This document shows positions 6,255 through 62,578 of a stretch of DNA of 64,000 bases, one piece after another. The notes beneath the pieces were generated by a model, which saw only the letters and a program-made list of their open reading frames with translations, ran no database searches and was not told the DNA's origin. The stretch's first letter is position 1; each line of letters begins with the position of its first letter. The DNA comes from Ostrea edulis (lineage: Eukaryota), in assembly GCF_947568905.1 (NCBI RefSeq), contig NC_079164.1, positions 53,444,001 through 53,508,000 of the forward strand, in the 5' to 3' direction. The position numbers and the translations under genes are program-made.

Positions 6255-9200
6255 CGAGGGTTGATCTTAAAGTTCATAAAAAAAATTCCTAAATTTTATT
6301 GTGATGAAGCAATGGCATAGAATATACATAGTTATGAACCAGAGAATTTAACTAGTATGAGTAGAAAATTGTATAACTTTATGATAACAAGCAGTTTGAA
6401 AATGGTACGTTGCGAAACCAGGGGGAGGTGTCTTTGAAAGTGCCGTTTTGATATAAATTTACTAAATATATATATTTAACGTGACCACACCACAAAAACC
6501 AAACCTTTTCAAGATAGCGCTCCGCCTATTTTTATTGATTTTTATGGCGATTCACCCACATGTCATAGCATGTGTCTTAATACCACTTAAAATCAAACCC
6601 CGGAAGAATTTCCTGTGTTGCCGCTTTTAGATCCTAAGTAGTCTCAAACTGTAAACCACTTAGATCTTCCTTCACCTCGGGGAAAACGCGAAAGTCCATC
6701 GATGCAAAGTCGGTGCTATAAGGAGGTTGTTCTAATTTTTGGAAACCCAGAGGATAGAATTCAAGCTGTGTTTTCAGAGCGTTGTGGGATACGGCGTTAT
6801 CTTGCTGTGTTTTCAGAGCGTTGTGGGATACGGCGTTATCTTGCTGTGTTTTCAGAGCGTTGTGGGATACGGCGTTATCTTGCTGTGTTTTCAGAGCGTT
6901 GTGGGATACGGCGTTATCTTGCTGTGTTTTCAGGGCGTTGTGGGATACGGCGTTATCTTGCTGTGTTTTCAGGGCGTTGTGGGATACGGCGTTATCTTGC
7001 TGTGTTTTCAGGGCGTTGTGGGATACGGCGTTATCTTGCTGTGTTTTCAGGGCGTTGTGGGATACGGCGTTATCTTGCTGTGTTTTCAGAGCGTTGTGGG
7101 ATACGGCGTTATCTTGCTGTGTTTTCAGAGCGTTGTGGGATACGGCGTTATCTTGCTGTGTTTTCAGGGCGTTGTGGGATACGGCGTTATCTTGCTGTGT
7201 TTTCAGAGCGTTGTGGGATACGGCGTTATCTTGCTGTGTTTTCAGAGCGTTGTGAGATACGGCGTTATCTTGCTGTGTTTTCTGAGCGTTGTGGAATACG
7301 GCGTTATCTTGCTGTGTTTTCAGAGCGTTGTGGGATACGGCGTTATCTTGCTGTGTTTTCAGAGCGTTGTGGGATACGGCGTTATCTTGCTGTGTTTTCA
7401 GGGCGTTGTGGGATACGTCGTTATCTTGCTGTGTTTTCAGAGCGTTGTGGGATACGGCGTTATCTTGCTGTGTTTTCAGGGCGTTGTGGGATACGGCGTT
7501 ATCTTGCTGTGTTTTCAGGGCGTTGTGGGATACGGCGTTATCTTGCTGTGTTTTCAGAGCGTTGTGGGATACGGCGTTATCTTGCTGTGTTTTCAGGGCG
7601 TTGTGGGATACGGCGTTATCTTGCTGTGTTTTCAGGGCGTTGTGGGATACGGCGTTATCTTGCTGTGTTTTCAGAGCGTTGTGGGATACGGGGTTATCTT
7701 GCTGTGTTTTCAGGGCGTTGTGGGATACGGCGTTATCTTGCTGTGTTTTCAGGGCGTTGTGGGATACGGCGTTATCTTGCTGTGTTTTCAGAGCGTTGTG
7801 GGATACGGCGTTATCTTGTTGTGTTTTCAGGGCGTTGTGGGATACGGCGTTATCTTGCTGTGTTTTCAGAGCGTTGTGGGATACGGCGTTATCTTGCTGT
7901 GTTTTCTGAGCGTTGTGGAATACGGCGTTATCTTGCTGTGTTTTCAGAGCGTTGTGGGATACGGCGTTATCTTGCTGTGTTTTCAGAGCGTTGTGGGATA
8001 CGGCGTTATCTTGCTGTGTTTTCAGGGCGTTGTGGGATACGGCGTTATCTTGCTGTGTTTTCAGAGCGTTGTGGGATACGGCGTTATCTTGCTGTGTTTT
8101 CAGGGCGTTGTGGGATACGGCGTTATCTTGCTGTGTTTTCAGGGCGTTGTGGGATACGGCGTTATCTTGCTGTGTTTTCAGAGCGTTGTGGGATACGGTG
8201 TTATCTTGCTGTGTTTTCAGGGCGTTGTGGGATACGGCGTTATTTTGCTGTGTTTTCAGGGCGTTGTGGGATACGGCGTTATCTTGCTGTGTTTTCAGGG
8301 CGTTGTGGGATACGGCGTTATCTTGCTGTGTTTTCAGGGCGTTGTGGGATACGGCGTTATCTTGAAGAATAAAGTCTTCAGTGTCCAATTCTAGTAGTTT
8401 GTTTGTGTTTTGTTTTTTTAAAGAAGGAAGGAGATGAAATCTGAGGTTCTAAACATTAATATTAGAATCCATTAGAACAGATGAGGGGGGGGCGGTAACA
8501 TACTGTCATCCGGAGTTTTAATTTATCATATTAGTATTCAGTAAAACAATCATTCACATGTTTTAGAATGTATAATTGTTATTGAAAGGTTAGTTTATTC
8601 AATTTGACTTCGATTTTACATATCGCTGAATAAATGAATGTTGTGTATCAATCCTTTGATGCATTCACAGTCCGTCCCTCTGGCACCTGATGAGTAAGAA
8701 TTATCTCGCGCCAATCCATAGAGATAAACATGCGTTAGGTACAAGGATTTTTTGCTTTCTTCAATAGTGAGGATTGGTGTGTATTATATACAGCAGACTG
8801 CTTCTTTGATTTCAGGACGTAATGCTAGAGCCATGGTTATGATTTGATCAAGGAACATCACAGACATTGTCTTAAAAACTCATTATATCTCAATCCCTGA
8901 CCTAGAAAATAGTCTAGACATCTATCTCGCACTCACTATCTTCATATTCAGATCAAATTTCAAAATGCGCTCGGCTGTTCAATATGAGCTCCCAATCTCC
9001 GCCACAGTGTCCCGGTCAGATTTTGATCATCTTCCTCCTTAAAGCCGAGGTTTATAACCAGTGTTTTGCCACTTGAACACGAGTTGCTACACTTTCGTCC
9101 TGTCTCTGTCGTCGATTTATGCGTCAGAGTCAAGGTGTTCCCAAGGTTTTCACAGAACTTTTATGGATTTTCGATGTATTTCAATGATGTCATGAGAAAT

Positions 9201-30885: not shown

Positions 30886-32811
30886 CTCCAGATTCGTGTC
30901 CGGGCCATAACTTCTTTGTTCTTTGACATAGGCATACCATATTTGGCACACAGGTGGATCACCATGAGACGATGTGTCAGGTACCTTCATGACCTCTATA
31001 TGACCTTGACCTTAAGGTCAAAATTAAAGTTTTTTTTACAATGGATTCGTGTCCGGGCCATAACTTCTTTGTTCTTTGACATAGGCATACCATATTTGAC
31101 ACATGAGTGTATCACCATAAGACGATGTGTCATGTACCTTCATATGACCTTGACCTCAAGGTCAAAATTAAAGGTTTTTTACAATGGATTCGTGTCCGGG
31201 CCATAACTTCTTTGTTCTTTGACATAGGCATACCATATTTGACACATGAGTGTATCACCATGAGATGATGTGTCATGTACCTTCATGACCTCCATATGAC
31301 CTTGACCTCAAGGTCAAAATTAAACGTTTTTACAATGGATTTGTGTCAGGGCCATGACTTCCTTGTTCTTTGACATAGGCATACCATATTTTACACATGA
31401 GTGTATCACCATGAGATGATGTGTCAAGTACCTTCATGACCTCTATATGACCTTGAACTTTAACCTCAAATTGATTATAGGGTTTTGACATAGTCATACC
31501 ATAAGACATGGGTGTATCACCATGAGACTATGTGTCATGTACATTTATGACCCCTTTATGACCTTGACCTTTGATCTCAAGGTCAAAATTATAGGTTTAT
31601 GGCATGGATTTGTGTTCGGACTATATCTTTCATTTTCTTCTACAAAGGCATACCATATTTTTACACTCGGGAAAGAGGTAATTTATACCTATTAACAACA
31701 CCATTTGGGAGATTGGGGTAAACGGGGGGGGGGGGGGGGGGGTATTCTTAGTGAGCATTGCTCACAGTACATCTTGTTAAATTCTGGTGATGTTTCTGAA
31801 ATATATAATACAGAGCAATTTTCATTGAATTAAATTTTTGGTGACAAAATGACAGCTATGCTCCTTTAAGATATAAGAGCATATCTTATTTTATACTTTT
31901 GCTGAATACTAGAATATTAGAATTTAGCTTCTAGATTTCATAGTCCTTGGGACTAGTAATACTTTTGTAACAGGAAGGGAAAACCAGACCGGGACTCGAA
32001 CTCGGGGCCCCCTGATTCTCTAGTCAGTTGCTCTACCAACTGAGCTATCTGGCCACCGGCGATTGAACCCGATTGACAGCTACACTTTAACTAGTACTCA
32101 GTTGACCGATATAAGGCCTTTGGGCCTCTTATTTTTTCCCCTGTCTAAAGTATGAAATATTGGAACTTTCAGGGTTGTCCATGTGCAACCTTTACTTATA
32201 TGTGAAAGAAATTATAGACTAATAGATACACAATTTATGTGTGTGTGTGGGGGGGGGGGGGTAGTAGAACTCAGAAAAGGCCTACTTTTATACAGCCAGT
32301 GCTTCATTTGGGAGACTTTACAATCAGTAGATTAAAATCATATCTTGTTGTATGTAAAACTTTGATCCCCCTTGTGGCCCCATCCTACCCCCGGGGGCCA
32401 TGATTTGAACAAACTTGCATCTGCACTATGTCAGGAAGCTTTCATGTAAATCTCAGCTTTTCTGGCTTAGTGGTTCTTGAGAAGAAGATTTTTAAAGTTT
32501 TCCGCTATATATTTGTATGTAAAACTTTGATCCCCCCTTGTGGCCCCATCCTACCCCTGGGGGCCATGATTTGAACAAACTTGAATCTGCAATATGTCAG
32601 GAAGCTTTCATGTAATTTTCAGCTCTTCTGGCCCAGTGGTTCTTGAGAAGAAGATTTTTAAATGACCCCACCCTATTTTTGCATTTTTGTGATTATCTCC
32701 CCTTTGAAAGGGACACGGCCCTTCATTTGAACAAACTTGAAAGCCCTTTACCCAAGAATGCTTTTGGGCAAGTTTGGTTGAAATTGGCCTAGTGGTTCTT
32801 GAGAAGAAGTC

Positions 32812-33442: not shown

Positions 33443-33548
33443 CTAAAAAGTTGAGATCACAGACATTTACATGTGTAATCTGTCAGATCTACTAACTGAG
33501 GAACATATACATTACTGCATTAATTTTCTGACTACGTGAATAACAAAC

Positions 33549-34015
33549 CTGCGATTGGCAGTCTTCCAGCATAATTGGATCTTCCATCAATTTTAGAACT
33601 GTGATATCGGCTTCTTTCCCAGGTGTCAAACTTCCTATTTTACTTTCCCAACCGATTGCCTTTGCAGGAGTTGACGTCACAGCACGAATGACTTCGGTAA
33701 GAGGCATGCCAAGGTGTAAAAACTTTGACATTACTGTAGGAAGATCGTATGCGGGCCCAACATGATTCCCGGTGTGAAGGTCGGTACTAATGGTGTCTGG
33801 ATAAAAGTTGCATTGCGCGCATATTTCCGCCACTGTCCACCCAAATGAGCCTTGCCCGTGGCCAACGTCAAATAGCACTCTCTTCTCTCTCGCGTTGAGG
33901 ACATCTTGGTGAATAGTCCTGGTACTTGGGTCTAAGATACATGATCTATATGGATGAAACGTGTGGGTATAGAGATCACCTGCTCTCAGGTCGCGGGGGC
34001 ATCCTAATTCGCTAC
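33549..34015 (-). CDS. COG3964-type amidohydrolase, coding exon 5
   Basis: Acceptor TTCTTTAG|GT and donor CAG|GTTTGT; 467 nt. GDLYTHTFH...VLFDVGHGQGSF...PDTISTDLH...FLHLGMPLTEVIRAVTSTPAKAIG...GSLTPGKEADITVL. Confidence 0.95.
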
Positions 34016-47569: not shown

Positions 47570-49570
47570 CCAGGATTTGGCCATGATGATATTTTTGGCA
47601 ACTGGTTACATTTTCTGGTGGTGGACGGAAAGAACGATTCTATGTAGGTTGTGGTGCGACAGAATGGGATTATGTAACAGTATCAATGTCCTCTCTCTGG
47701 CTGCTCATATTTGGTTAAATTGGAGAGGCAGTTCGATGACAACTGGGGAGTTGACATCCAGGTACATCATAGGCTCTGATTCGTCGTTGGCACAAAGCTC
47801 TCCCACTTCAGCCTGTTATTCATCGCTGTGACACTACTGGTCAAGCTGCAATTACTTGTCTTGAACCTAGCTGCTCTCCCACCCTAACCTGTTATTCATC
47901 ACTGTGACACTACTGGTCAAGCTGCAGTTACTTGTCATGAACCTAGCTGCTCTCCTCGGCACTACGTTTATTTTGTCGACGTTCTTGACGCAAGGTTCCC
48001 AGCTGTTAGATGCATATTCTATCTGGGTACTGACCATCGTGTTGTAGCATTTGTCCTTGATGGAAGTTGGACAGGACAAAAGGTTCCTCCGTAAGAAGAC
48101 GGTGGTGTTGTTTGCATTCTTACACCCGCTGTCTATATGATGATTCCAATGACAAGTCCTAAGTATTTGACCTTTGTGGTAACAGCCATTTCCTTCTTAT
48201 GAATGTTGTAGGGGGTAATGCGTTGTTTCCTTTTTGGCTACTGGTAATAGGAATAACCTCTGCCTAGGTTAAAGTGCATCAGCCAGTCTGTTTCCAAAAG
48301 GTGAAGGTTGTCAAGATCGCTTTGAAGTTGTCTGGTATCCACCTCTGTAGTGATGATCCTGTACAGAAGGTATAGTTGTCTTCAAATGATATGGCCCTGG
48401 AGTTGACCCTGGTGGGCAGGTCATTAATGTATGCCTGGAAGAGCAGTGGACCGAGAAACATTTGTTGGGACACTCCAGATGTGAATAGTGTGGTTGATGG
48501 GACATAGCCCTCTATCAGTACTCGTTGCGTTTGGCCAGACAACAAACTTCGGATCCAGTTGAGCAGGCAGACTTTCACATCATAATGATGCTACCAACCT
48601 CTCAGGTGGGACTTTGTCAACAGGTTTTGAAAAATGCATTACCACTATGTCAATCTGAGTGTTTTTGTCAATTTTCATAGCGATGTCCTGAATTGTTATC
48701 ATACGTGATTCAGGGAATCGCTTCTTCCTGAACCCATGTTGGTAGTCAGGTTTGGATGTTGTGCTGCTCAAAGAAGTTCATAAGGTGGTTACAGATGATG
48801 TACTTTATCACCTTATAACAAAACCGGTCGCGGTAGCTCAGTAGTAGAGTATTCGCTTTGTAACCAGGAAGGCATGAGTTCGAACCCTCTCTCTATGGCC
48901 GGGTCAAATCTAAGACGTAAATATAGGTTGTGATTGCTCCTTTTCCAAACATTTGGCATTTAGAAGTGAGAATCACGAGTCTTTCGGATATGACCTTAAA
49001 AACAGAGGTCCCGTGTTACAGAAGGCGTTGGCACGTTAAAGACCCCTCACTGATACAGCTCTGATTGCTAAGCATAGGTCGTTTGTGGTACTATTTCTGT
49101 AACCCTTTTCAGTGACTCTGATGTCGTTGAGATGGTGCTGGTGCCTAAATATGAGGAATACTTTGTGGTGAATACTGACGAAAACATTGGTTCAATGGAG
49201 AGGTTTTGGCTTGGGTTTCCATCAGAGTGAAGAGGAGCGATCAAAGTACGGTCACACTTCTTTGTCTTGAAGAAGGTTTCTTGCTGTTGGAGTCTTCCTG
49301 CACCATGTCTGATACATGAGAGTTGTAGGCTCTCTTCCACTCCAGGTGGATAAATTGCTGTAGGTGTCTAAATCGCTGTCCTTGTCCCTGCCTGATGTCT
49401 TTTACTTACTGAAGGCTCTTGGTTCTTCACTTTTCGTGATCCTTCTGTTACAACATGGCTGTTAAACCTGTTCGGAATCCACTTGGTTGGTACATGCTTC
49501 CTGATGATGTCGAGGCAGATCATCTTGTCCATAGGCTTTTTATGGTGCGTCATGTGCCAAACTGTCAAGG
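47570..49570 (-). pseudogene. Degenerate non-LTR retrotransposon (CR1/L2-group) ORF2 with a SINE inserted at ~48823-49080
   Basis: YQHGFRKKR...DIVVMHFSKPVDKVP; WIRSLLSGQTQRV...TSGVSQQMFLGPLLFQAYINDLP; CYNTMVSTQIEYAS..W...PRRAARF. Confidence 0.85.
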
Positions 49571-49758
49571 AGTTGTGTCAGATCATTGTCATTTGTCGTC
49601 TTTAAAGTACATGTATCAGCTTTTTTTCCATAAGTGAATGATTTGGTTGACTGGTTTCTGTTTGGATGCATGGTATGCACCTATGAAACAGGGAAGGGCG
49701 GTTAGTGATGAAAATATCCAGGGTGTTCGCACATCGAGTAGGAAAATTTACTAATATT

Positions 49759-50217
49759 CGTTTTTGGCACGCTGTTTTTGGCTATACATGTATTTAGCTT
49801 CAGAGACATTATTTGTCGAAATGCGCATCTGGTGCATCAAAATTGGTACCGTATAAGTTTTACATTATGACCCCTGGGTCGAGGCCTCTGCTGGTGGACT
49901 GTTAGTCCCCGAGGGTCTCTACAGCCCAGTAGCTAAGTACTTCGTTACTAGCTTGAAAATACGGATGTATATTTAATTGCTGTTACAAAATTTAGAAATT
50001 CATTTCAAAATTAAGGATTATCTCCCTCATGCATAGCTCTTATCCTTGGACGAATTTGGCTCCACGTTTTTGGCACGCTGTTTTTGGCTATATTTAGCTC
50101 TAAAACTTCATAGTTATTTCGGATTTCAAACATTTCGGTTGAGCATCACTGAAGAGACATTATTTGTCGAAATGCGCATCTGGTGCATCAAAATTGGTAC
50201 CGTATAAGTTTTACATT
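49759..50217 (+). mobile_element. Retrozyme-like head-to-tail repeat (351-nt monomer, ~1.3 copies) carrying hammerhead ribozymes
   Basis: Direct repeat 49759-49866 matches 50065-50217; the first copy has a ~45-nt deletion. Homologous cleavage positions 49829 and 50180 are 351 nt apart. Confidence 0.75.
50143..50186 (+). ncRNA. Type I minimal hammerhead ribozyme
   Basis: GCATCA (stem I) CTGAAGA (core) GACA-TTATT-TGTC (stem II) GAA ATGCGCAT (palindromic stem III) C| TGGTGC (stem I'). The cleavage triplet is AUC after 50180. Confidence 0.85.
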
Positions 50218-51424
50218 GTATAGCATTAAACATACTTAATTTCATTGATAGAGGCTATGATAAGCGCGCATATAGAGGGGAAAGTCCGACCCCACAATCC
50301 CGAGTTTGGTACAAAACAAATTCCCAGTTGTGTTATTCCCGAAAATAGAATGAAAAAATATTGCATATGGTGATCCCTCCCCCTTGGGAAAAGATTCTGG
50401 ATTATCTCATGTATGAGAGCATGCGCTCTCCGTCAACATATTACCTATGCACGATTTTGTTAATTTGATTACGACTACGTTTGTCGTAAACATGTGTTGC
50501 CATTAGACTTTGATTCCCAAGTGACCCTTTGGAACGCTCGCTGAGCTTCATACACCCCAACCCCCTTGATAATTTTACTAGTGTTATTCTAAAATATGAC
50601 TATCAATGGGTAGCGGTTGAACTGTAGCTCTCTGGTATTTATTGGGATATACCAGAGAGCTATGGATCCACTTCTTATGAAAAACTTCAATTTAAAATGA
50701 AACTTCTTTGCATCATTGAGGTCTTATTTCGCTGGTGTATACCCCCCCCCCCCCCCCCAGAAAGCTACAATTCTCCAGCTAATCGATGGAAAGATGTTAT
50801 TATCAGCATGCTTTATACACTTAAAATTATGTCTCCCTTCTTCCAAGGGGAAACATATTGTTTTTGTACTTTCTGTTTGTCTGTCCATCTGTCAGTCTAT
50901 TCATCTGTCTGTCACAAAATATTGTTAACACTTCTCCTCCAGTATGGCTTATCAGATGAACTTGAGACTTTGTATTATGCTTCGTTGCCATTTGTAAATA
51001 TGCATATTGGTGGGACGGGATGATCCAATTATTTTCCTAAAAGTTATAGTGGATTTAAGAGGGGTGGAGAATGCAGAATAGTTTGTGAACACTTCTATAT
51101 GGCTTATCGGATGGACTTGAAACATTGTACAATGCTTCATTGCCATTTGTAAATGTGCATATTGTCGGGATAGAAGAATCCCATTATTTTCCTAGAAGTT
51201 ATAGTGGATCTAAGTTGGTCGGAAATTGTAATATAGTTTGTGAATATTTCTCCTATATGGTTTATCCAATAGACTTGAAACTGTGTACAATACTTCATTA
51301 TCATGTAAGGATGTTCACATTGTTCTGAACAGGTATCTAATATTTTCTTACAATTTACAGTGGATCAAGGAGTGTTTTATACCTTGTTTTCATGTACAAG
51401 GGTATGTTCACTTTCCTACTAGTA

Positions 51425-54400
51425 CTGTGACACATGCAGACCATACGTAAAGTTCCACCGTGTGACACATACAAAACATATGTATAGAACTGTGTGACAC
51501 ATACAGAACATATGTATAGAACCATGTGACACATACAGAATATATGTATAGAACTGTGTGACACATGCAGACCATACGTAAAGTTCCACCGTGTGACACA
51601 TACAGAACATATGTATAGAACCATGTGATACATACAGAACGTATGTATAGAACTGTGTGACACATACAGAATATATGTATAGAACTGTGTGACACATACA
51701 GAACATATGTATAGAACTGTGTGACACATACAGAACATATGTATAGAATCATGTGACACATACAGAACATATGTATAGAACTGTGTGACACATACAGAAC
51801 ATATGTATAGAACTGTGTGACACATACAGAACATATGTATAGAATCATGTGACACCTACAGAACATATGTATAGAACTGTGTGACACATACAGACCATAC
51901 GTAAAGTTCCACCGTGTGACACATACAGAACATATGTATAGAACCATGTGACACATACAGAGCATACGTATAGAACCATGTGACACATACAGAGCATACG
52001 TATAGAACTGTGTGACACATACAGAGCATACGTATAGAACCATGTGACACATACAGAACATACGTATAGAACTGTGTGACACATACAGAATATACATATA
52101 GTTCAACTGTTTGACACATACAGAGCATACGTATAGAACTGTGTGACACATACAGAATATACATATAGTTCAACTGTTTGACACATACAGAGCATACGTA
52201 TAGAACTGTGTGACACATACAGAATATACATATAGTTCAACTGTTTGACACATACAGAGCATATGTATAGAACTGTGTGACACATACAGAACATATGTAT
52301 AGAACTGTGTGACACATACAGAGCATACGTATAGAACTGTGTGACACATACAGAACATATGTATAGAACCATGTGACACATACAGAACATATGTATAGAA
52401 CTGTGTGACACATGCAGACCATACATAAAGTTCCACCGTGTGACACATACAGAACATATGTATAGAACTGTGTGACACATACAGAACATATGTATAGAAC
52501 CATGTGACACATACAGAACATATGTATAGAACCATGTGACACATACAGAGCATACGTATAGAACTGTGTGACACATACAGAGCATACGTATAGAACTGTG
52601 TGACACATACAGAATATATGTATAGAACTGTGTGACACATACAGAATATATGTATAGAACTGTGTGACACATACAGAATATATGTATAGAACTGTGTGAC
52701 ACATACAGAACATATGTATAGAACTGTGTGACACATACAGAACATATGTATAGAACTGTGTGACACATACAGAATATATGTATAGAACTGTGTGACACAT
52801 ACATAGCATATGTATAGAACTGTGTAACACATACAGAACATATGTATAGAACTGTGTGACACATACAGAATATATGTATAGAACTGTGTGACACATACAG
52901 AATATATGTATAGAACTGTGTGACAAATAGAGAACATATGTATAGAACTGTGTGACACATACAGAATATATGTATAGAACTGTGTGACACATACAGAATA
53001 TATGTATAGAACTGTGTGACACATACAGAATATATGTATCGAACTGTGTGACACATACAGAACATATGTATAGAACTGTGTAACACATACAGAGAATACG
53101 TATAGAACTGTGTGACACATACAGAGCATACGTATAGAACTGTGTGACACATACAGAACATATGTATAGAACTGTGTGACACATACAGAACATATGTATA
53201 GAACTGTGTGACACATACAGAATATATGTATAGAACTGTGTGACACATACAGAATATATGTATAGAACTGTGTGACACATACAGAACATATGTATAGAAC
53301 TGTGTGACACATACAGAACATATGTATAGAACTGTGTGACACATACAGAATATATGTATAGAACTGTGTGACACATACATAGCATATGTATAGAACTGTG
53401 TAACACATACAGAACATATGTATAGAACTGTGTGACACATACAGAATATATGTATAGAACTGTGTGACACATACAGAATATATGTATAGAACTGTGTGAC
53501 AAATAGAGAACATATGTATAGAACTGTGTGACACATACAGAATATATGTATAGAACTGTGTGACACATACAGAATATATGTATAAAACTGTGTGACACAT
53601 ACAGAATATATGTATAGAACTGTGTGACACATACAGAACATATGTATAGAACTGTGTAACACATACAGAACATATGTATAGAACTGTGTGACACATGCAG
53701 ACCATACGTAAAGTTCCACCGTGTGACACATACAGAACATATGTATAGAACTGTGTGACACATACAGAACATATGTATAGAATCATGTGACACATACAGA
53801 GCATACGTATAGAACTGTGTGACACATACAGAGCATATGTATAGAACTGTGTGACACATGCAGAACATATGTATAGAACTGTGTGACACATGCAGACCAT
53901 ACGTAAAGTTCCACCGTGTGACACATACAGAACATATGTATAGAACTGTGTGACACATACAGAACATAGGTATAGAATCATGTGACACATACAGAGCATA
54001 CGTATAGAACTGTGTGACACATACAGAGCATATGTATAGAACTGTGTGACACATGCAGAACATATGTATAGAACTGTGTGACACATGCAGACCATACGTA
54101 AAGTTCCACCGTGTGACACATACAGAACATATGTATAGAACTGTGTGACACATACAGAAAATATGTATAGAACCATGTGACACATACAGAATATATGTAT
54201 AGAACTGTGTGACACATGCAGACCATACGTAAAGTTCCACCGTGTGACACATACAGAACATATGTATAGAACTGTGTGACACATACAGAGAATACGTATA
54301 GAACTGTGTGACACATACAGAGCATATGTATAGAACTGTGTGACACATACAGAACATATGTATAGAATTGTGTGACACATACAGAACATACGTATAGAAC

Positions 54401-54600
54401 TGTGTGACACATACAGAAAATATGTATAGAACTGTGTGATACATACAGAACATAAATATAGTTCCACCGTGTGACACATACAGAGCATAAATATAGTTCC
54501 ATTGTGTGACATGCTGAACATACGTAAAGAACCGTGTGACACATACAGACCATAGGTATAGTTCCACCATTTGACACATACAGAACACACGTATAGAACC
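51425..54600. repeat. 32-bp minisatellite (GTGTGACACATACAGAACATATGTATAGAACT), ~100 copies with interspersed longer variants
   Basis: Read directly. The minus strand is stop-free in long stretches, which produces the 550-806 aa Cys/His/Tyr-rich pseudo-ORFs. Confidence 0.97.
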
Positions 54601-55688
54601 GTAAGGAAAAGGTCGTGAAGTGGAGAACATCTTGTGTCATACCGACCACGTCAAACCTCATTCTCTCAACAGAGGGCGTGTTACGTGAGCTTCACTTACT
54701 CGTCTGTCAACGCTTGGAATCACGTGACAATACAGTCACATGATATAAACAGTCATTCTCGTTTCCTTTCCCTTTAAAAGTTTTGGCAACTGGTGATATA
54801 TCGGGCTCTTTTTATAGCCAACTGGCACTTTGTTACGCACATTTTTACCACTTATCTGTTAGTCTCTTATATGACCGGTTTGATCGTATTTTTACAGCCT
54901 TTTTTACTTATGATTCCATGTTTACATTAAATCTCCACCACGTGAATGCCCTATATTCATACGCATATTACGAAGTAGTTCCAAATTTGGGGTCAGAAAA
55001 CAGCGAGTTTAAACAATTTACAGTAAGCATCAATTTAATTGCACCAAAAGCATTTCATGATATGACTAAATATTTAGTCCAAAATATAAATGTTGGATAT
55101 TAGAAACTTTTACAAGATTTGTATAAAAAGCCCTTTACAGAGGTGCAGTGCTCGTCCCGCACGGAACTCTGGGTAGAGAATGGTCAAACCTTAGACGTAA
55201 AAACAGGTAGTGATTGCTCCTTCGCCAAACACTCGGCATTTAAAAGTGAGAATCACGAGTCTTTCGGATATGACCTTAAAAACGTGTCTGGACATGAGAA
55301 ATCAACGGGACGTGAAACGACCAACCCATGTTTCTAATATTAATTTTTCCGCGCGTTTGCAGCGGACCATAAATGCAACTCCGTCATATATACATTAGAT
55401 CCTTTAATGGATCAGTACTTTATGAATATCAGTATTTAATTTGCTGAAATTGTCAGATATTTCATTTTTTATAGTTTATAATACAAACGAAATTTTTGTC
55501 TTGTTTCCAACACCGAAAAAAAGTCTATTGAATACGGTGCATATAACTTTAATAAACTGAATTACAACGAAAACAGTCTGTAATATCACAAAATCTCCAT
55601 AATAGCATTTAAAAAAAAACGGATCTTCAATGTCAAGGTGATGACATCTTGAAGTTTATGATTGATTGATTGATTGTATCTTGCTTAA

Positions 55689-60600: not shown

Positions 60601-61821
60601 GCACTTACACACAGGATTAAACGTATTAATACAAGAAGTACTTTTATGGTGGAGTTGATTTCTTGATAATGTTTTTAATGGACTGGAGTTACTACATACT
60701 GTGATATAATGGAATATTTGTTCATGCTCCAATATTCAAAATTCGAGGCTTCAACAATGTTTAATATCGTTTTCCATACTGTTATTCTCCTTATGGAAGT
60801 AAAATAAAAGACCCCACTATTCACAAGTGTTACAAAACTAGTAACAACATTTTAAACTGGACCGAAAATCTACATACGCACTAATATTTCCCTCATAAAA
60901 CGACGTAATAATTAACGATGACTGGATCAATCATTACAATCTCAACGTAACACATGTATTTAAACAAAAATATTGAAGTTCACTAACACGCTATGGATAG
61001 AAGGCGAGGTCGTGAAAAGTTTATTTTATTCGCTCTTTGCGGCCATTTTGAATGCTTCAAACTATTTGACCTACATTTATGTCAAGATATTGTGTGTGTG
61101 TGCACGAAAATCGTGCGTATACATACGTCTTGTTTGTACAAGTATCAACAATTACAATGAACTTTTAAATCAATCATTGAAAAATTCGAGAAAATAAAAT
61201 CCTCATTTCTTCTGGCACTAAGCATGGATTTCAGAATTTTTTTAAAAAAAGCATATAATCCCCACCACTCTGTGATTTCCTTAACCAAAATCGATACGCA
61301 GAATTAGTCAGCCAGTCAGCCCTGACAACATTTAACAAAATCGATATCATTAGCAGGACCCGTCATTGGCAAGGATATATATACGTTCTGGTTATCGGAC
61401 CAAAAAATCTGTTTCATATCGATTTCGTACCAGGGATTTACACTGTTAAATACCATGGTTCGGATAGTAACGTCTATTAATACACAGTAAAGGAATGATA
61501 TGATGTAATTGGTCGATCATACCAAACCTTACTTTTTACGATGTTCAATGGTATTTGGTAAACCACACCAAAAACCTACTTTTTACGATGTTAATGGTGT
61601 GTGTGTATGGGTGTGTGTACACATGATGACTAATGGATATACAAATATAAGTGTTGCAAGCTTTGTCCTTGATCACTAAGCGTTACGCTCTTGTATTTGC
61701 AGCTTGAAAGAAGGAAATATTCAGAATTTTTTTCCTGGGTTTAAGGGTCTAGTAAAAATACCTAAACTATATATATTGTGTGTGTGTGTATATATACTCC
61801 CCTACACCAATATTTGCCTAC

Positions 61822-62107
61822 CTGCACTCCCGGCATCAATAACAGTCGTAACCCCACGCGAAAGACAATGCTCATCGGGGTTGATCCCCAATGGTGTAGC
61901 ATACTGGTAACAGTGAACATGGCAATCAATCAGACCAGGCGTTACTAAGCAACCACCAGCATCGAAAGTCTCTTTCGCCAGAAAATGTGCATTATTGCCA
62001 ATCGACAGGATGGTTCCATTATTGACAGCAATATCAGCTACTGTGTCCAATCCATTCGCGGGATCGATTATTCTTCCGTTTTTAACCATAAAGTCAATGT
62101 GTGACAT
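61822..62107 (-). CDS. COG3964-type amidohydrolase, coding exon 1
   Basis: MSHIDFMVKNGRIIDPANGLD...GCLVTPGLIDCHVH...LSRGVTTVIDAGSAG; donor GCAG|GTAGGC. An upstream acceptor TTTATAG at 62131 suggests a 5' UTR exon. The six exons total 1275 nt = 424 aa plus stop. Confidence 0.93.
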
Positions 62108-62578
62108 GTTGTAATGGAGGTTCTTGTTATCTATAAACATATATCTTGTAGAACCGTTAGACTAACTATCTCTCTTTCTCTCAAGTTTACGTAAACTCTA
62201 GCTCTATAGCTCTACGAATTATATTTTAATGAAATGGTAATGTAAATGTCGAAGATAACAGGACAGATATATCCATCAATATAATATGTGTTTGATAACA
62301 ATAGTATGGCTAAAATATATCCTCAACGATCAGTTGATTTGTAAGACACGAAATTATAATAAAACATAAAACTATTTTTGAGATAGTCCCTGGTCGATAA
62401 TATATGATATACCATGTGACTGCAATGGGTCGAAGGTCACGTGTGCAGAATGACGTCACGACAAGCCATGAATTTTTACTACAGTGTATAGAGAATATAG
62501 CAACTGTATTTGCAATGATTGGATTTGTGTTTTATTTTGTGTCCGCATAAAATCAAACGTTATGTAGCATAACAAGAA
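62108..62578. promoter_or_regulatory. Putative bidirectional promoter between the amidohydrolase and SPEN-like genes
   Basis: Divergent start codons at 62107(-) and 62579(+). The interval has GTCACGTG (E-box, 62436-62443) and a perfect TGACGTCA (CRE, 62451-62458) and carries no recognisable transposon. Confidence 0.6.

What the first reader, a model, noticed from the sequence alone, without database searches (positions are those of the whole stretch)
49759..50217. Hammerhead ribozyme in a 351-nt head-to-tail unit: candidate retrozyme / circRNA source inside a host intron
Seen: a complete type I hammerhead core (CUGAAGA, 4-bp stem II, GAAA, palindromic AUGCGCAU stem III, AUC cleavage site, closing stem I) at 50143-50186. 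A damaged second copy sits at 49801-49835, exactly 351 nt upstream. The monomer has several hairpins (GACCC/GGGTC, GGACT/AGTCC, AAGGAT/ATCCTT) and no ORF. Established: minimal type I hammerheads with palindromic stem III act as dimers and occur in Penelope-like elements. They also occur in small non-autonomous metazoan retrozymes, including in bivalves, that yield circular RNAs. Inference: this is a copy of a ~350-nt retrozyme family, possibly mobilised by the Penelope-like RT family fragmented across this window. It is antisense to the amidohydrolase pre-mRNA, so it should not cut that transcript.
Basis: partly seen in the sequence, partly recalled or inferred. Interest (0 to 1): 0.75.

Follow-up and report, generated by a model that had tools for sequence, protein, structure and literature searches.

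The report
Oyster hammerhead retrozyme, one decayed copy
This is a real self-cutting hammerhead RNA motif inside one 459-base copy of a very abundant, non-coding mobile repeat of a bivalve genome. The kind is already described in mussels, corals and salamanders, and this copy has lost its second ribozyme, so the locus is genuine but ordinary.

Summary
Window 50143-50186 (+) is a complete type I hammerhead: helix I 6 bp, helix II 4 bp, helix III 2 bp with a palindromic loop, and cleavage after C50180. Rfam RF00163 scores it 31.2 bits, just under its cut-off of 34. A truncated second copy lies exactly 351 nt upstream.

The 459-bp insertion (49759-50217) is 1.31 units of a 351-nt non-coding repeat. 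The exact 38-nt ribozyme occurs 6,432 times in this 895-Mb genome. Copies are 98-99% alike and form arrays of 1.2 to 5.4 units. They share a fixed 3' end about 36 nt past the cleavage site and have variable 5' truncation. No target duplication was seen, and the 5' flanks are enriched in (TA)n. These are marks of target-primed reverse transcription of the Penelope-like-element type.

It is a member of the known animal non-LTR retrozyme class (Cervera & de la Pena 2020). This locus has only one intact ribozyme. It lies antisense within an amidohydrolase gene.

No circular RNA was shown, because only contigs were available. No partner Penelope element was identified, and none is detectable in the window.

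This scan has already found and followed up the same family many times elsewhere in this genome, with the same verdict.

The parts
49759..50217 (+). Whole retrozyme insertion: 459 bp, 1.31 units (unit positions 236-351, then 1-351, then 1-37)
   Evidence: Boundaries come from alignment to 24 independent genomic copies with unique flanks and from direct repeats.
49759..49829 (+). 5' partial unit carrying a private rearrangement (6-nt insertion, about 51 nt deleted)
   Evidence: Pairwise alignment with 50065-50180. No other locus examined shares the deletion.
49802..49835 (+). Hammerhead remnant. It keeps helix II, GAAA, helix III, the cleavage site (49829/49830) and the helix I 3' strand. It lacks the helix I 5' strand and CUGA.
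49830..50180 (+). One complete 351-nt unit, cleavage site to cleavage site
   Evidence: 351-nt spacing. It is 97-99% identical to units at 30 other loci.
49869..49946 (+). GC-rich block (59% GC). It is conserved at 85-92% in a relative that is 78% identical overall. It is predicted to form a hairpin with one compensatory G-C to U-A change. It contains a B-box-like GGGTCGAGGCC at 49876-49886.
   Evidence: The fold z-score is only -1.46.
50143..50186 (+). Intact type I hammerhead ribozyme
   Evidence: Read directly from the sequence. Pattern found once against 0/100 shuffles. RF00163 31.2 bits, E 1.2e-6. The identical 38-mer occurs 6,432 times in the genome.
50180..50181 (+). Predicted self-cleavage site (after C17 of AUC)
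   Evidence: Position in the hammerhead consensus. Cleavage itself was not tested.
50181..50217 (+). 37-nt 3' tail that ends the insertion. The end is the same in 21 of 24 loci (+35 to +38).
   Evidence: The terminal 17-mer occurs 10,640 times in the genome, and only 2,443 of these continue into the unit body.
61805..62161 (-). N-terminal exon of the host amidohydrolase gene (context)
   Evidence: Amidohydro_3 E 1.2e-5. PDB 8je0_A residues 3-95, E 4e-19.
33492..33878 (-). C-terminal-part exon of the host amidohydrolase gene (context)
   Evidence: Amidohydro_1 E 7e-12. PDB 8je0_A residues 251-361, E 2.4e-21. Genome search.

Best explanation
The feature is a 5'-truncated, slightly damaged 1.31-unit copy of a young, very abundant 351-nt non-LTR retrozyme of a bivalve (probably oyster) genome. 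A retrozyme is a non-coding, non-autonomous retroelement in which every unit carries a canonical metazoan type I hammerhead.

Shown here:
- the ribozyme core is intact;
- the family exists, with thousands of dispersed copies;
- the units are head-to-tail;
- the 3' end is fixed about 36 nt past the cleavage site, the 5' ends vary, target duplications are absent, and the flanks are (TA)n-rich.

Inferred from published work on the class:
- arrays with two or more ribozymes are transcribed;
- the hammerheads, probably paired as dimers through the palindromic AUGCGCAU helix III, cut out 351-nt monomers;
- a host RNA ligase circularises the monomers;
- a Penelope-like element's reverse transcriptase copies the circular or multimeric RNA by target-primed reverse transcription. 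It starts at an internal site near +36 and runs round 0.x to about 5 times before stopping.

This particular copy sits antisense in an amidohydrolase intron. It has one intact ribozyme and is most likely an inert by-product. At best its transcript could be cut once, or at both sites only if the intact core acts in trans on the remnant.
For: - Intact core and helices.
- 609 first-look candidates and 69 scored matches at 93-100% identity.
- 6,432 exact copies of the 38-nt ribozyme, against 0 for the reversed control.
- Arrays of 1.18-5.4 units at 351-nt period.
- The 3' end falls at +35 to +38 in 21 of 24 independent loci, with varied 5' starts.
- The tail 17-mer occurs 10,640 times, and only 2,443 continue into the body. 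So about three quarters are element termini, and most insertions are shorter than about one unit.
- No target duplication in 23 of 24 loci. A nested insertion in L007 shows at most 1-2 nt duplicated.
- (TA)n at the 5' junction in 5 of 24 loci against 2.3% of control positions, p 3e-4.
- No coding capacity.
- The N7 position (A or C) is the only core variation seen in otherwise intact motifs.
- A marine-metagenome relative, 78% identical, keeps the ribozyme (90%) and a similar 3' end while other parts fall to 49-68%.
- Intact canonical PLEs (RVT_1 plus C-terminal GIY-YIG; ORFs of 787 and 973 aa) and 1,102 GIY-YIG candidates are present in the genome.
- RNA-library contigs cover the element but not this locus's flanks.
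- Literature: PMC7229834 (mussel retrozymes of 350-390 bp, circRNAs, PLEs as likely mobilisers); PMC4209133 (helix I 6 bp, II 4 bp, short palindromic helix III, dimeric action); PMC8557442 (PLE partial tandems, 30-40-bp tail, (TA)n bias); bioRxiv 10.64898/2026.07.22.740005.
Against: - No circle junction and no cleavage-site ends could be seen, because all runs were contigs.
- One RNA contig runs from a copy into its genomic flank (the L009 flank). Read-through transcripts or DNA in the library therefore explain part of the signal.
- The monomer is not more stable than shuffled sequence, unlike the 'highly self-paired' description of the class.
- The Rfam score is below the curated cut-off.
- Units within an array are barely more alike than units at different loci (98.6% against 97.9%). 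This does not favour fresh rolling-circle copies of one circle.
- Neither of the two PLE families examined shares the ribozyme or the tail.
- This locus has only one intact ribozyme.
Confidence: 0.85

Rival explanations
1. The family is the same, but the circular RNA plays no part in mobility. The reverse transcriptase would copy linear read-through or multimeric transcripts of existing arrays. The more-than-unit structure would arise as it does for Penelope-like elements themselves (pseudo-LTR formation or template jumping). The hammerhead would only trim transcripts, or would simply hitch-hike.
For: - PLEs of 3-4 kb form partial tandems with a 30-40-bp tail without any need for circles (PMC8557442).
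- Units within an array differ by up to 2.8%, and one unit of the 5.4-unit array differs from its neighbours, as expected if a heterogeneous array was copied.
- An RNA-library contig spans a copy's 3' junction into the flank.
- No circle was shown.
Against: - Abundant circRNAs were demonstrated for the mussel counterpart (PMC7229834).
- 3' ends scatter over +35 to +38, as expected for microhomology priming on a template that continues past that point.
- A linear hammerhead-cleaved monomer would end at position 351, not at +36.
Confidence: 0.12
2. The repeat is only the terminal repeat (pseudo-LTR) of a full-length Penelope-like element, not an independent non-autonomous element.
For: - Hammerheads sit in PLE pseudo-LTRs (PMC4209133).
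- Retrozymes are related to PLE pseudo-LTRs in Xenopus (bioRxiv 10.64898/2026.07.22.740005).
- One locus (L007) has a PLE RT fragment about 180 nt from an old copy.
Against: - No PLE coding similarity lies within 1.5 kb of 23 of 24 insertions, nor anywhere in the window.
- Both flanks are unique sequence.
- The two PLE families fetched have unrelated 3' regions.
- Arrays repeat a 351-nt unit with no ORF.
Confidence: 0.02
3. The repeat is a hammerhead-bearing satellite DNA that spreads by DNA-level mechanisms such as unequal crossing-over or segmental duplication.
For: - Tandem head-to-tail units are present.
- Two pairs of loci are segmental duplicates with shared flanks (L014/L024 and L018/L030).
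Against: - There are thousands of dispersed short arrays on all chromosomes.
- The 3' end is fixed and the 5' truncation varies.
- The longest array seen has 5.4 units.
Confidence: 0.01

Closest known systems
Non-LTR retrozymes of the mussel Mytilus galloprovincialis (Cervera & de la Pena 2020, PMC7229834)
   Same: - The host is also a bivalve.
- Units are about 350-390 bp, repeated head-to-tail, each with a type I hammerhead.
- There are thousands of copies.
- The element is non-coding.
- It coexists with PLEs.
   Different: - No sequence comparison was possible, because the paper's held supplement contains no matching sequence.
- Circular RNA and in vitro cleavage were shown for the mussel and not here.
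- The fixed 3' end at +36 and the 5' truncation pattern are documented here and are not described in the sections of that paper read here.
Newt/axolotl satellite 2 and amphibian retrozymes
   Same: - Type I hammerhead with a short palindromic helix III that works as a dimer.
- Tandem units of about 330 bp.
   Different: - The host is a vertebrate.
- Arrays and copy numbers are much larger (up to 120,000 copies).
- The sequence is unrelated.
Penelope-like element pseudo-LTR hammerheads (Cervera & de la Pena 2014, PMC4209133; Craig et al. 2021, PMC8557442)
   Same: - The hammerhead lies near the element's 3' end.
- Insertions are partial tandems with a 30-40-bp tail.
- (TA)n target bias.
- Target duplications are unclear.
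   Different: - There is no RT/EN ORF.
- The unit is only 351 nt.
- The ribozyme is the canonical form (helix I 6 bp, II 4 bp), not the min-HHR with a long helix II.
- The two PLE families sampled here share no sequence with it.
Plant LTR retrozymes (Cervera et al. 2016, PMC4918200)
   Same: - Non-autonomous and non-coding.
- Hammerhead-processed into circular RNA that is thought to be the retrotransposition template.
   Different: - Plant elements have type III hammerheads in about 350-bp LTRs, a primer-binding site, a polypurine tract and 4-bp target duplications, and are mobilised by Gypsy elements.
- None of these features is present here.

Membership tests
Hammerhead ribozyme, type I (Rfam RF00163) | Conserved catalytic core: CUGANGA, GAAA, the A15.1-U16.1 pair, H17 at the cleavage site, and the G10.1-C11.1 pair | tested here: met
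   All are present at 50149-50180. Among family copies the only core variation in intact motifs is at N7.
Hammerhead ribozyme, type I (Rfam RF00163) | Three helices around the core, with helix I open (type I topology) | tested here: met
   Helix I has 6 bp, helix II 4 bp, and helix III 2 bp with a 4-nt palindromic loop. This matches the 'canonical metazoan' architecture described in PMC4209133.
Hammerhead ribozyme, type I (Rfam RF00163) | Score at or above the Rfam gathering cut-off | tested here: not met
   31.2 bits against a cut-off of 34. E 1.2e-6 on the 81-nt stretch, over the full model. Missed in scans of the whole window and of 1.2 kb. This is a curated threshold, not a biological feature.
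Hammerhead ribozyme, type I (Rfam RF00163) | Self-cleavage at the predicted site | not testable with these tools
   Only contigs were available, so no read ends could be seen.
Animal non-LTR retrozyme (Cervera & de la Pena 2020) | Short (about 170-400 bp) head-to-tail repeats, each with a type I hammerhead | tested here: met
   351-nt units in arrays of 1.18-5.4 units at 24 loci. 18 of the 24 have two or more intact hammerheads.
Animal non-LTR retrozyme (Cervera & de la Pena 2020) | Non-coding, with no LTR, primer-binding site or polypurine-tract features | tested here: met
   The longest stop-free run in a trimer is 56 codons. No tRNA-like element. No terminal repeats other than the unit itself.
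Animal non-LTR retrozyme (Cervera & de la Pena 2020) | Dispersed multicopy family | tested here: met
   6,432 exact ribozyme 38-mers and 10,640 tail 17-mers across the genome.
Animal non-LTR retrozyme (Cervera & de la Pena 2020) | Expressed as unit-length linear and circular RNA | tested here: inconclusive
   The element is held in RNA libraries, with no coverage of this locus's flanks. There was no back-joining contig and no raw reads, and one contig reads through into another copy's flank.
Animal non-LTR retrozyme (Cervera & de la Pena 2020) | Coexistence with autonomous Penelope-like elements | tested here: met
   1,102 GIY-YIG candidates. Intact 787-aa and 973-aa ORFs with RVT_1 plus a C-terminal GIY-YIG.
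Animal non-LTR retrozyme (Cervera & de la Pena 2020) | This locus itself has two functional hammerheads flanking a unit (needed to release a monomer) | tested here: not met
   The 5' ribozyme lacks the helix I 5' strand and CUGA. This bears on the activity of this copy, not on family membership.
Penelope-like element pseudo-LTR | Physically part of an element that encodes RT (and EN) | tested here: not met
   No PLE RT/EN similarity in the window, nor within 1.5 kb of 23 of 24 copies.

The most novel reading that the evidence does not exclude
The ribozyme plus the 36-nt tail may be the module that a bivalve Penelope-like reverse transcriptase recognises. In that reading, cDNA synthesis starts at a fixed internal site about 36 nt downstream of the cleavage site on a circular or multimeric RNA. 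The partner may be one of the hammerhead-less Naiad elements that dominate bivalve genomes. That would mean the hammerhead belongs to the parasite and not to the autonomous element. It would also give the first concrete retrozyme-PLE interface to test.
Probability: 0.2. Interest if true: 0.45.

Novelty: new member of a known kind. Interest (0 to 1): 0.2.

Why it matters
For this locus, very little. It is one damaged copy among roughly eight thousand insertions of a published class of element, lying antisense in an intron, with no sign of an effect on the host gene.

At family level the oyster repeat is a clean data set for a question the literature leaves open, namely how animal retrozymes are copied back into DNA. 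The uniform 3' terminus at +35 to +38, the 5' truncation, the missing target duplications and the (TA)n bias all point to Penelope-type target-primed reverse transcription from an internal start site. That hypothesis can be tested by comparing 3' termini of the genome's PLE families with the retrozyme tail.

Tried and rejected
- Rfam at gathering threshold on the whole window, and at E<=10 on 1.2 kb, found no hammerhead. Only the 81-nt scan did.
- Search for the autonomous partner:
  - 30 GIY-YIG loci and 10 larger PLE loci were fetched.
  - Family B (973-aa ORF) has only a hammerhead-like string near its 3' end.
  - Family A (787 aa) has a core-like string with no helix II.
  - One unrelated PLE-type hammerhead lies in L068.
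  - None shares sequence with the retrozyme ribozyme or tail.
I could not locate the motif there.
The idea that the Naiad 3' end resembles the retrozyme tail is therefore untested.
- Target-site duplications: none in 23 of 24 loci. The one 18-21-nt match (L005) lies in a CA-rich repeat.
- Thermodynamic stability: no signal for the monomer (linear or circular, either strand) or for the conserved block.
- Covariation in the hammerhead: the copies are too alike, so only conservation and one C-G to U-G change were seen.
- Circle junction: no back-joining contigs in the RNA runs.
- Viral contig scan for the ribozyme: no match.
- Supplement of PMC7229834: no matching sequence.
- Pol III promoter idea for the B-box-like motif: about 0.07 such matches are expected by chance per unit (my own estimate). 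There is no A box upstream, and T5 runs inside the unit would terminate Pol III.
- PLE RT in the window: rejected at the sensitivity of tblastn and a two-family profile.

Full report
OBSERVATION

On the + strand, 50143-50186 reads:
- helix I 5' strand GCATCA;
- core CTGAAGA;
- helix II GACA/TGTC closed by a 5-nt loop;
- GAAA;
- TGCGCA, which with the flanking A and U forms the palindrome AUGCGCAU;
- TC, with predicted cleavage after C50180;
- helix I 3' strand TGGTGC.

A core-pattern search finds this site once in the 64-kb window and never in 100 dinucleotide-preserving shuffles.

Rfam missed it at gathering threshold and in a 1.2-kb scan at E<=10. When only 81 nt were given, RF00163 Hammerhead_1 aligned to exactly 50143-50186 over its full length. 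The score was 31.2 bits against a curated cut-off of 34, with E 1.2e-6.

The architecture is helix I 6 bp, helix II 4 bp, and helix III 2 bp with a 4-nt palindromic loop. Cervera & de la Pena 2014 (PMC4209133) call this the canonical metazoan type I hammerhead. It is not the Penelope 'min-HHR'.

The second copy is also real. 49802-49866 is identical to 50153-50217 at a spacing of 351 nt, and 49759-49786 is identical to 50065-50092. Between these blocks the upstream copy has a 6-nt insertion and has lost about 51 nt. It therefore lacks the helix I 5' strand and CUGA, but keeps helix II, GAAA, helix III, the cleavage site and the helix I 3' strand.

However, the unit folds no better than shuffled sequence:
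- linear + strand, z -0.33;
- - strand, z -1.22;
- circular, -75.0 kcal/mol, z -0.17.

A trimer of the unit has no stop-free run longer than 56 codons.

WHAT IT IS

The window comes from an 895-Mb assembly with ten large sequences. RNA runs that hold the repeat are labelled mollusc. Earlier notes of this scan take the genome for flat oyster; I did not test the species.

A genome search with the 459-bp insertion gave 609 first-look candidates. The 69 scored matches were at 93-100% identity and lay on all large contigs. The exact 38-nt ribozyme string occurs 6,432 times, against 0 for the reversed control.

In 24 independent loci the repeat forms head-to-tail arrays of 1.18 to 5.4 units with a 351-352-nt period. 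Eighteen of these loci carry two or more intact hammerheads, whereas the window copy carries one. The only variation inside otherwise intact cores is at the free N7 position, which is A or C.

A marine-metagenome contig (L072) holds a 1.2-unit copy of a relative that is 78% identical. Conservation along its unit is uneven:
- the ribozyme stays at 90%;
- a GC-rich block at unit positions 40-117 stays at 85-92%;
- other parts fall to 49-68%.

The GC-rich block is predicted to form a hairpin with one compensatory G-C to U-A change.

HOW IT SPREADS: SHOWN AND INFERRED

Shown:
- Every insertion ends at the same place. In 21 of 24 loci the family sequence stops 35-38 nt after the cleavage site, at ...GTTTTACAT(T). 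The 5' ends fall anywhere in the unit.
- Genome-wide, the 17-mer that ends at +36 occurs 10,640 times, and only 2,443 of these continue into the unit body. About three quarters of tails are therefore element termini.
- It follows that there are roughly eight thousand insertions, and that most are truncated to less than about one unit.
- Target-site duplications are absent in 23 of 24 loci. A young copy nested in an older inverted copy (L007) shows at most 1-2 nt duplicated.
- 5' junctions abut (TA)n in 5 of 24 loci, against 2.3% of control positions (p 3e-4).

These features match what Craig et al. 2021 (PMC8557442) describe for Penelope-like elements: partial tandems, a 30-40-bp tail at one end, a (TA)n bias and unclear duplications.

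Intact PLEs are present in the genome. There are 1,102 GIY-YIG candidates. [quoted passage not shown]

Inferred:
- The template extends past +36. The scatter of ends over +35 to +38 looks like microhomology priming on a continuous template. The template would then be a circular or multimeric RNA, not a hammerhead-cleaved linear monomer, which would end at position 351.
- The ribozymes probably act in pairs. Cofolding two copies gives -35.3 kcal/mol against 2 x -11.8 for monomers. The optimal dimer consists of two trans-hammerheads sharing an 8-bp helix III. This agrees with the dimer model in PMC4209133.
- Circularisation by a host ligase, and the use of circles as templates, are taken from Cervera & de la Pena 2020 (PMC7229834). 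That paper showed abundant circRNAs for 350-390-bp retrozymes of the mussel.

WHAT WAS NOT SHOWN

All sequencing runs offered were contigs, so no read ends and no circle junction could be seen.
- RNA-library contigs from a mollusc study and from a marine metatranscriptome cover the repeat but not this locus's flanks.
- One of them continues into the 3' flank of another copy (the L009 locus). Read-through transcription or DNA carry-over therefore explains part of the signal.
- Units within an array are only slightly more alike than units at different loci: 98.6% against 97.9%. This gives no support to fresh rolling-circle copies and leaves room for copying of multimeric transcripts.

The partner element was not found.
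- Neither PLE family examined shares the ribozyme or the tail.
- First-stage notes elsewhere in this genome suggest that Naiad-type PLE 3' ends resemble the retrozyme tail.

THIS LOCUS

The host gene is an amidohydrolase on the - strand.
- An exon at 61805-62161 matches residues 3-95 of PDB amidase 8je0_A (E 4e-19).
- An exon at 33492-33878 matches residues 251-361 of the same chain (E 2.4e-21).

The insertion at 49759-50217 lies between these exons on the opposite strand. I did not map the middle exons, so 'intron' is inferred.

The host pre-mRNA carries only the complement of the ribozyme, and no hammerhead was found on the - strand.

With one intact ribozyme the locus is a poor source of a 351-nt RNA. 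In the dimer geometry the intact core could in principle cut the remnant's site at 49829/49830 in trans, but this is speculation.

No Penelope-like RT is detectable in the window. tblastn with nine PLE proteins of this genome found nothing at E<1e-3, and a profile built from five of them scored best at E 0.22. The only RT-like piece is a weak, generic RVT_1 fragment at 48282-48590 (-). It has about 1,300 loose relatives genome-wide.

COMPARISON AND NOVELTY

The element meets the sequence-level definition of an animal non-LTR retrozyme:
- a type I hammerhead in each unit;
- short head-to-tail units;
- no coding capacity;
- a dispersed multicopy family;
- PLEs in the same genome.

Expression as circles remains untested. 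The class is published (PMC7229834; PMC4209133; a 2026 preprint, 10.64898/2026.07.22.740005, argues that animal retrozymes derive from PLE pseudo-LTRs).

I found no paper that describes an oyster family specifically, so I file it as a new member of a known kind.

The same family has already been flagged many times in this genome by this scan, and followed up with the same 'real but ordinary' verdict.

VERDICT

Interest is low (0.2).

The one thread worth pulling is at family level: the uniform 3' terminus, and whether it matches the tail of a particular PLE lineage.

Noticed in passing
window 31981-32054 (-): A tRNA match (Rfam RF00005, 48.2 bits) on the same strand as the amidohydrolase gene and inside its span. 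It could be a tRNA gene or a tRNA-derived repeat.
   Followed up: no
window 48282-48590 (-): A weak RVT_1 fragment (E 0.012) 1.2 kb from the retrozyme. It has about 1,300 loose relatives (30-57% identity) across the genome. This genome's PLE profile does not recognise it, so it is probably a decayed non-PLE retroelement.
   Followed up: partly
window 51426-51998, 50943-51299, and 52103-54661: Just downstream of the insertion lie a 32-nt tandem repeat (17.6 copies) and a 155-nt repeat (2.3 copies). Beyond them is a 2.5-kb stretch that is stop-free in several frames at once, which suggests low-complexity or tandem sequence. A similar stop-free stretch lies at 6634-8394.
   Followed up: no
window 49876-49886 (unit positions 47-57): GGGTCGAGGCC matches the Pol III B-box consensus GGTTCGANNCC at 10 of 11 places, and exactly in the L016 array variant. 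It is conserved in the 78%-identical relative. By my estimate about 0.07 such matches are expected by chance per unit. There is no A box, and T5 runs in the unit argue against Pol III.
   Followed up: partly
L061 (G000:C1:110499000-110508999) and table: PLE family A (787-aa ORF, preceded by an overlapping 406-aa ORF with no Pfam match) forms a direct tandem with a 3,717-bp period. Elsewhere it forms inverted pairs. Copies are 98-100% identical, so it looks recently active.
   Followed up: partly
L063:4008-4080: The 3' UTR of PLE family A holds a hammerhead-like string: CTGAGGA, GAAA, a palindromic GCGC, and a 5-bp helix I. It has no credible helix II. It resembles the 'HHR_core' cases of Craig et al. 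2021.
   Followed up: no
L068, about position 1753 (-): A separate minimal hammerhead (helix II GCC/GGC, palindromic GTAC helix III) about 1.5 kb downstream of a family-B-like PLE ORF. It is unrelated in sequence to the retrozyme ribozyme.
   Followed up: no
L005 (G000:C10:44513827-44514241): This is the only copy flanked by an 18-21-nt direct repeat. It lies in CA-rich repeated sequence, so the repeat may be a long target duplication or just the local repeat.
   Followed up: no
L009 3' flank (G000:C6, after 39951010) and run X1: A contig from a very small mollusc RNA library (3 million letters) runs from the retrozyme tail into the unique flank of this copy, with 30 of 30 letters identical. 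At least this copy is represented with its flank, either as read-through RNA or as DNA carry-over.
   Followed up: no
L072:2200-3606 (marine metagenome contig): A 469-aa open frame with no Pfam match sits 1 kb downstream of the diverged retrozyme copy on an environmental contig that is probably bivalve DNA.
   Followed up: no
run X19, window 49400-50600: Unique flanks have word depth of about 90-130, while contigs laid on the element sum to 3-9 million. The tool warns that this is not a copy number, but it suggests that related subfamilies are far more numerous than the exact-match counts.
   Followed up: no
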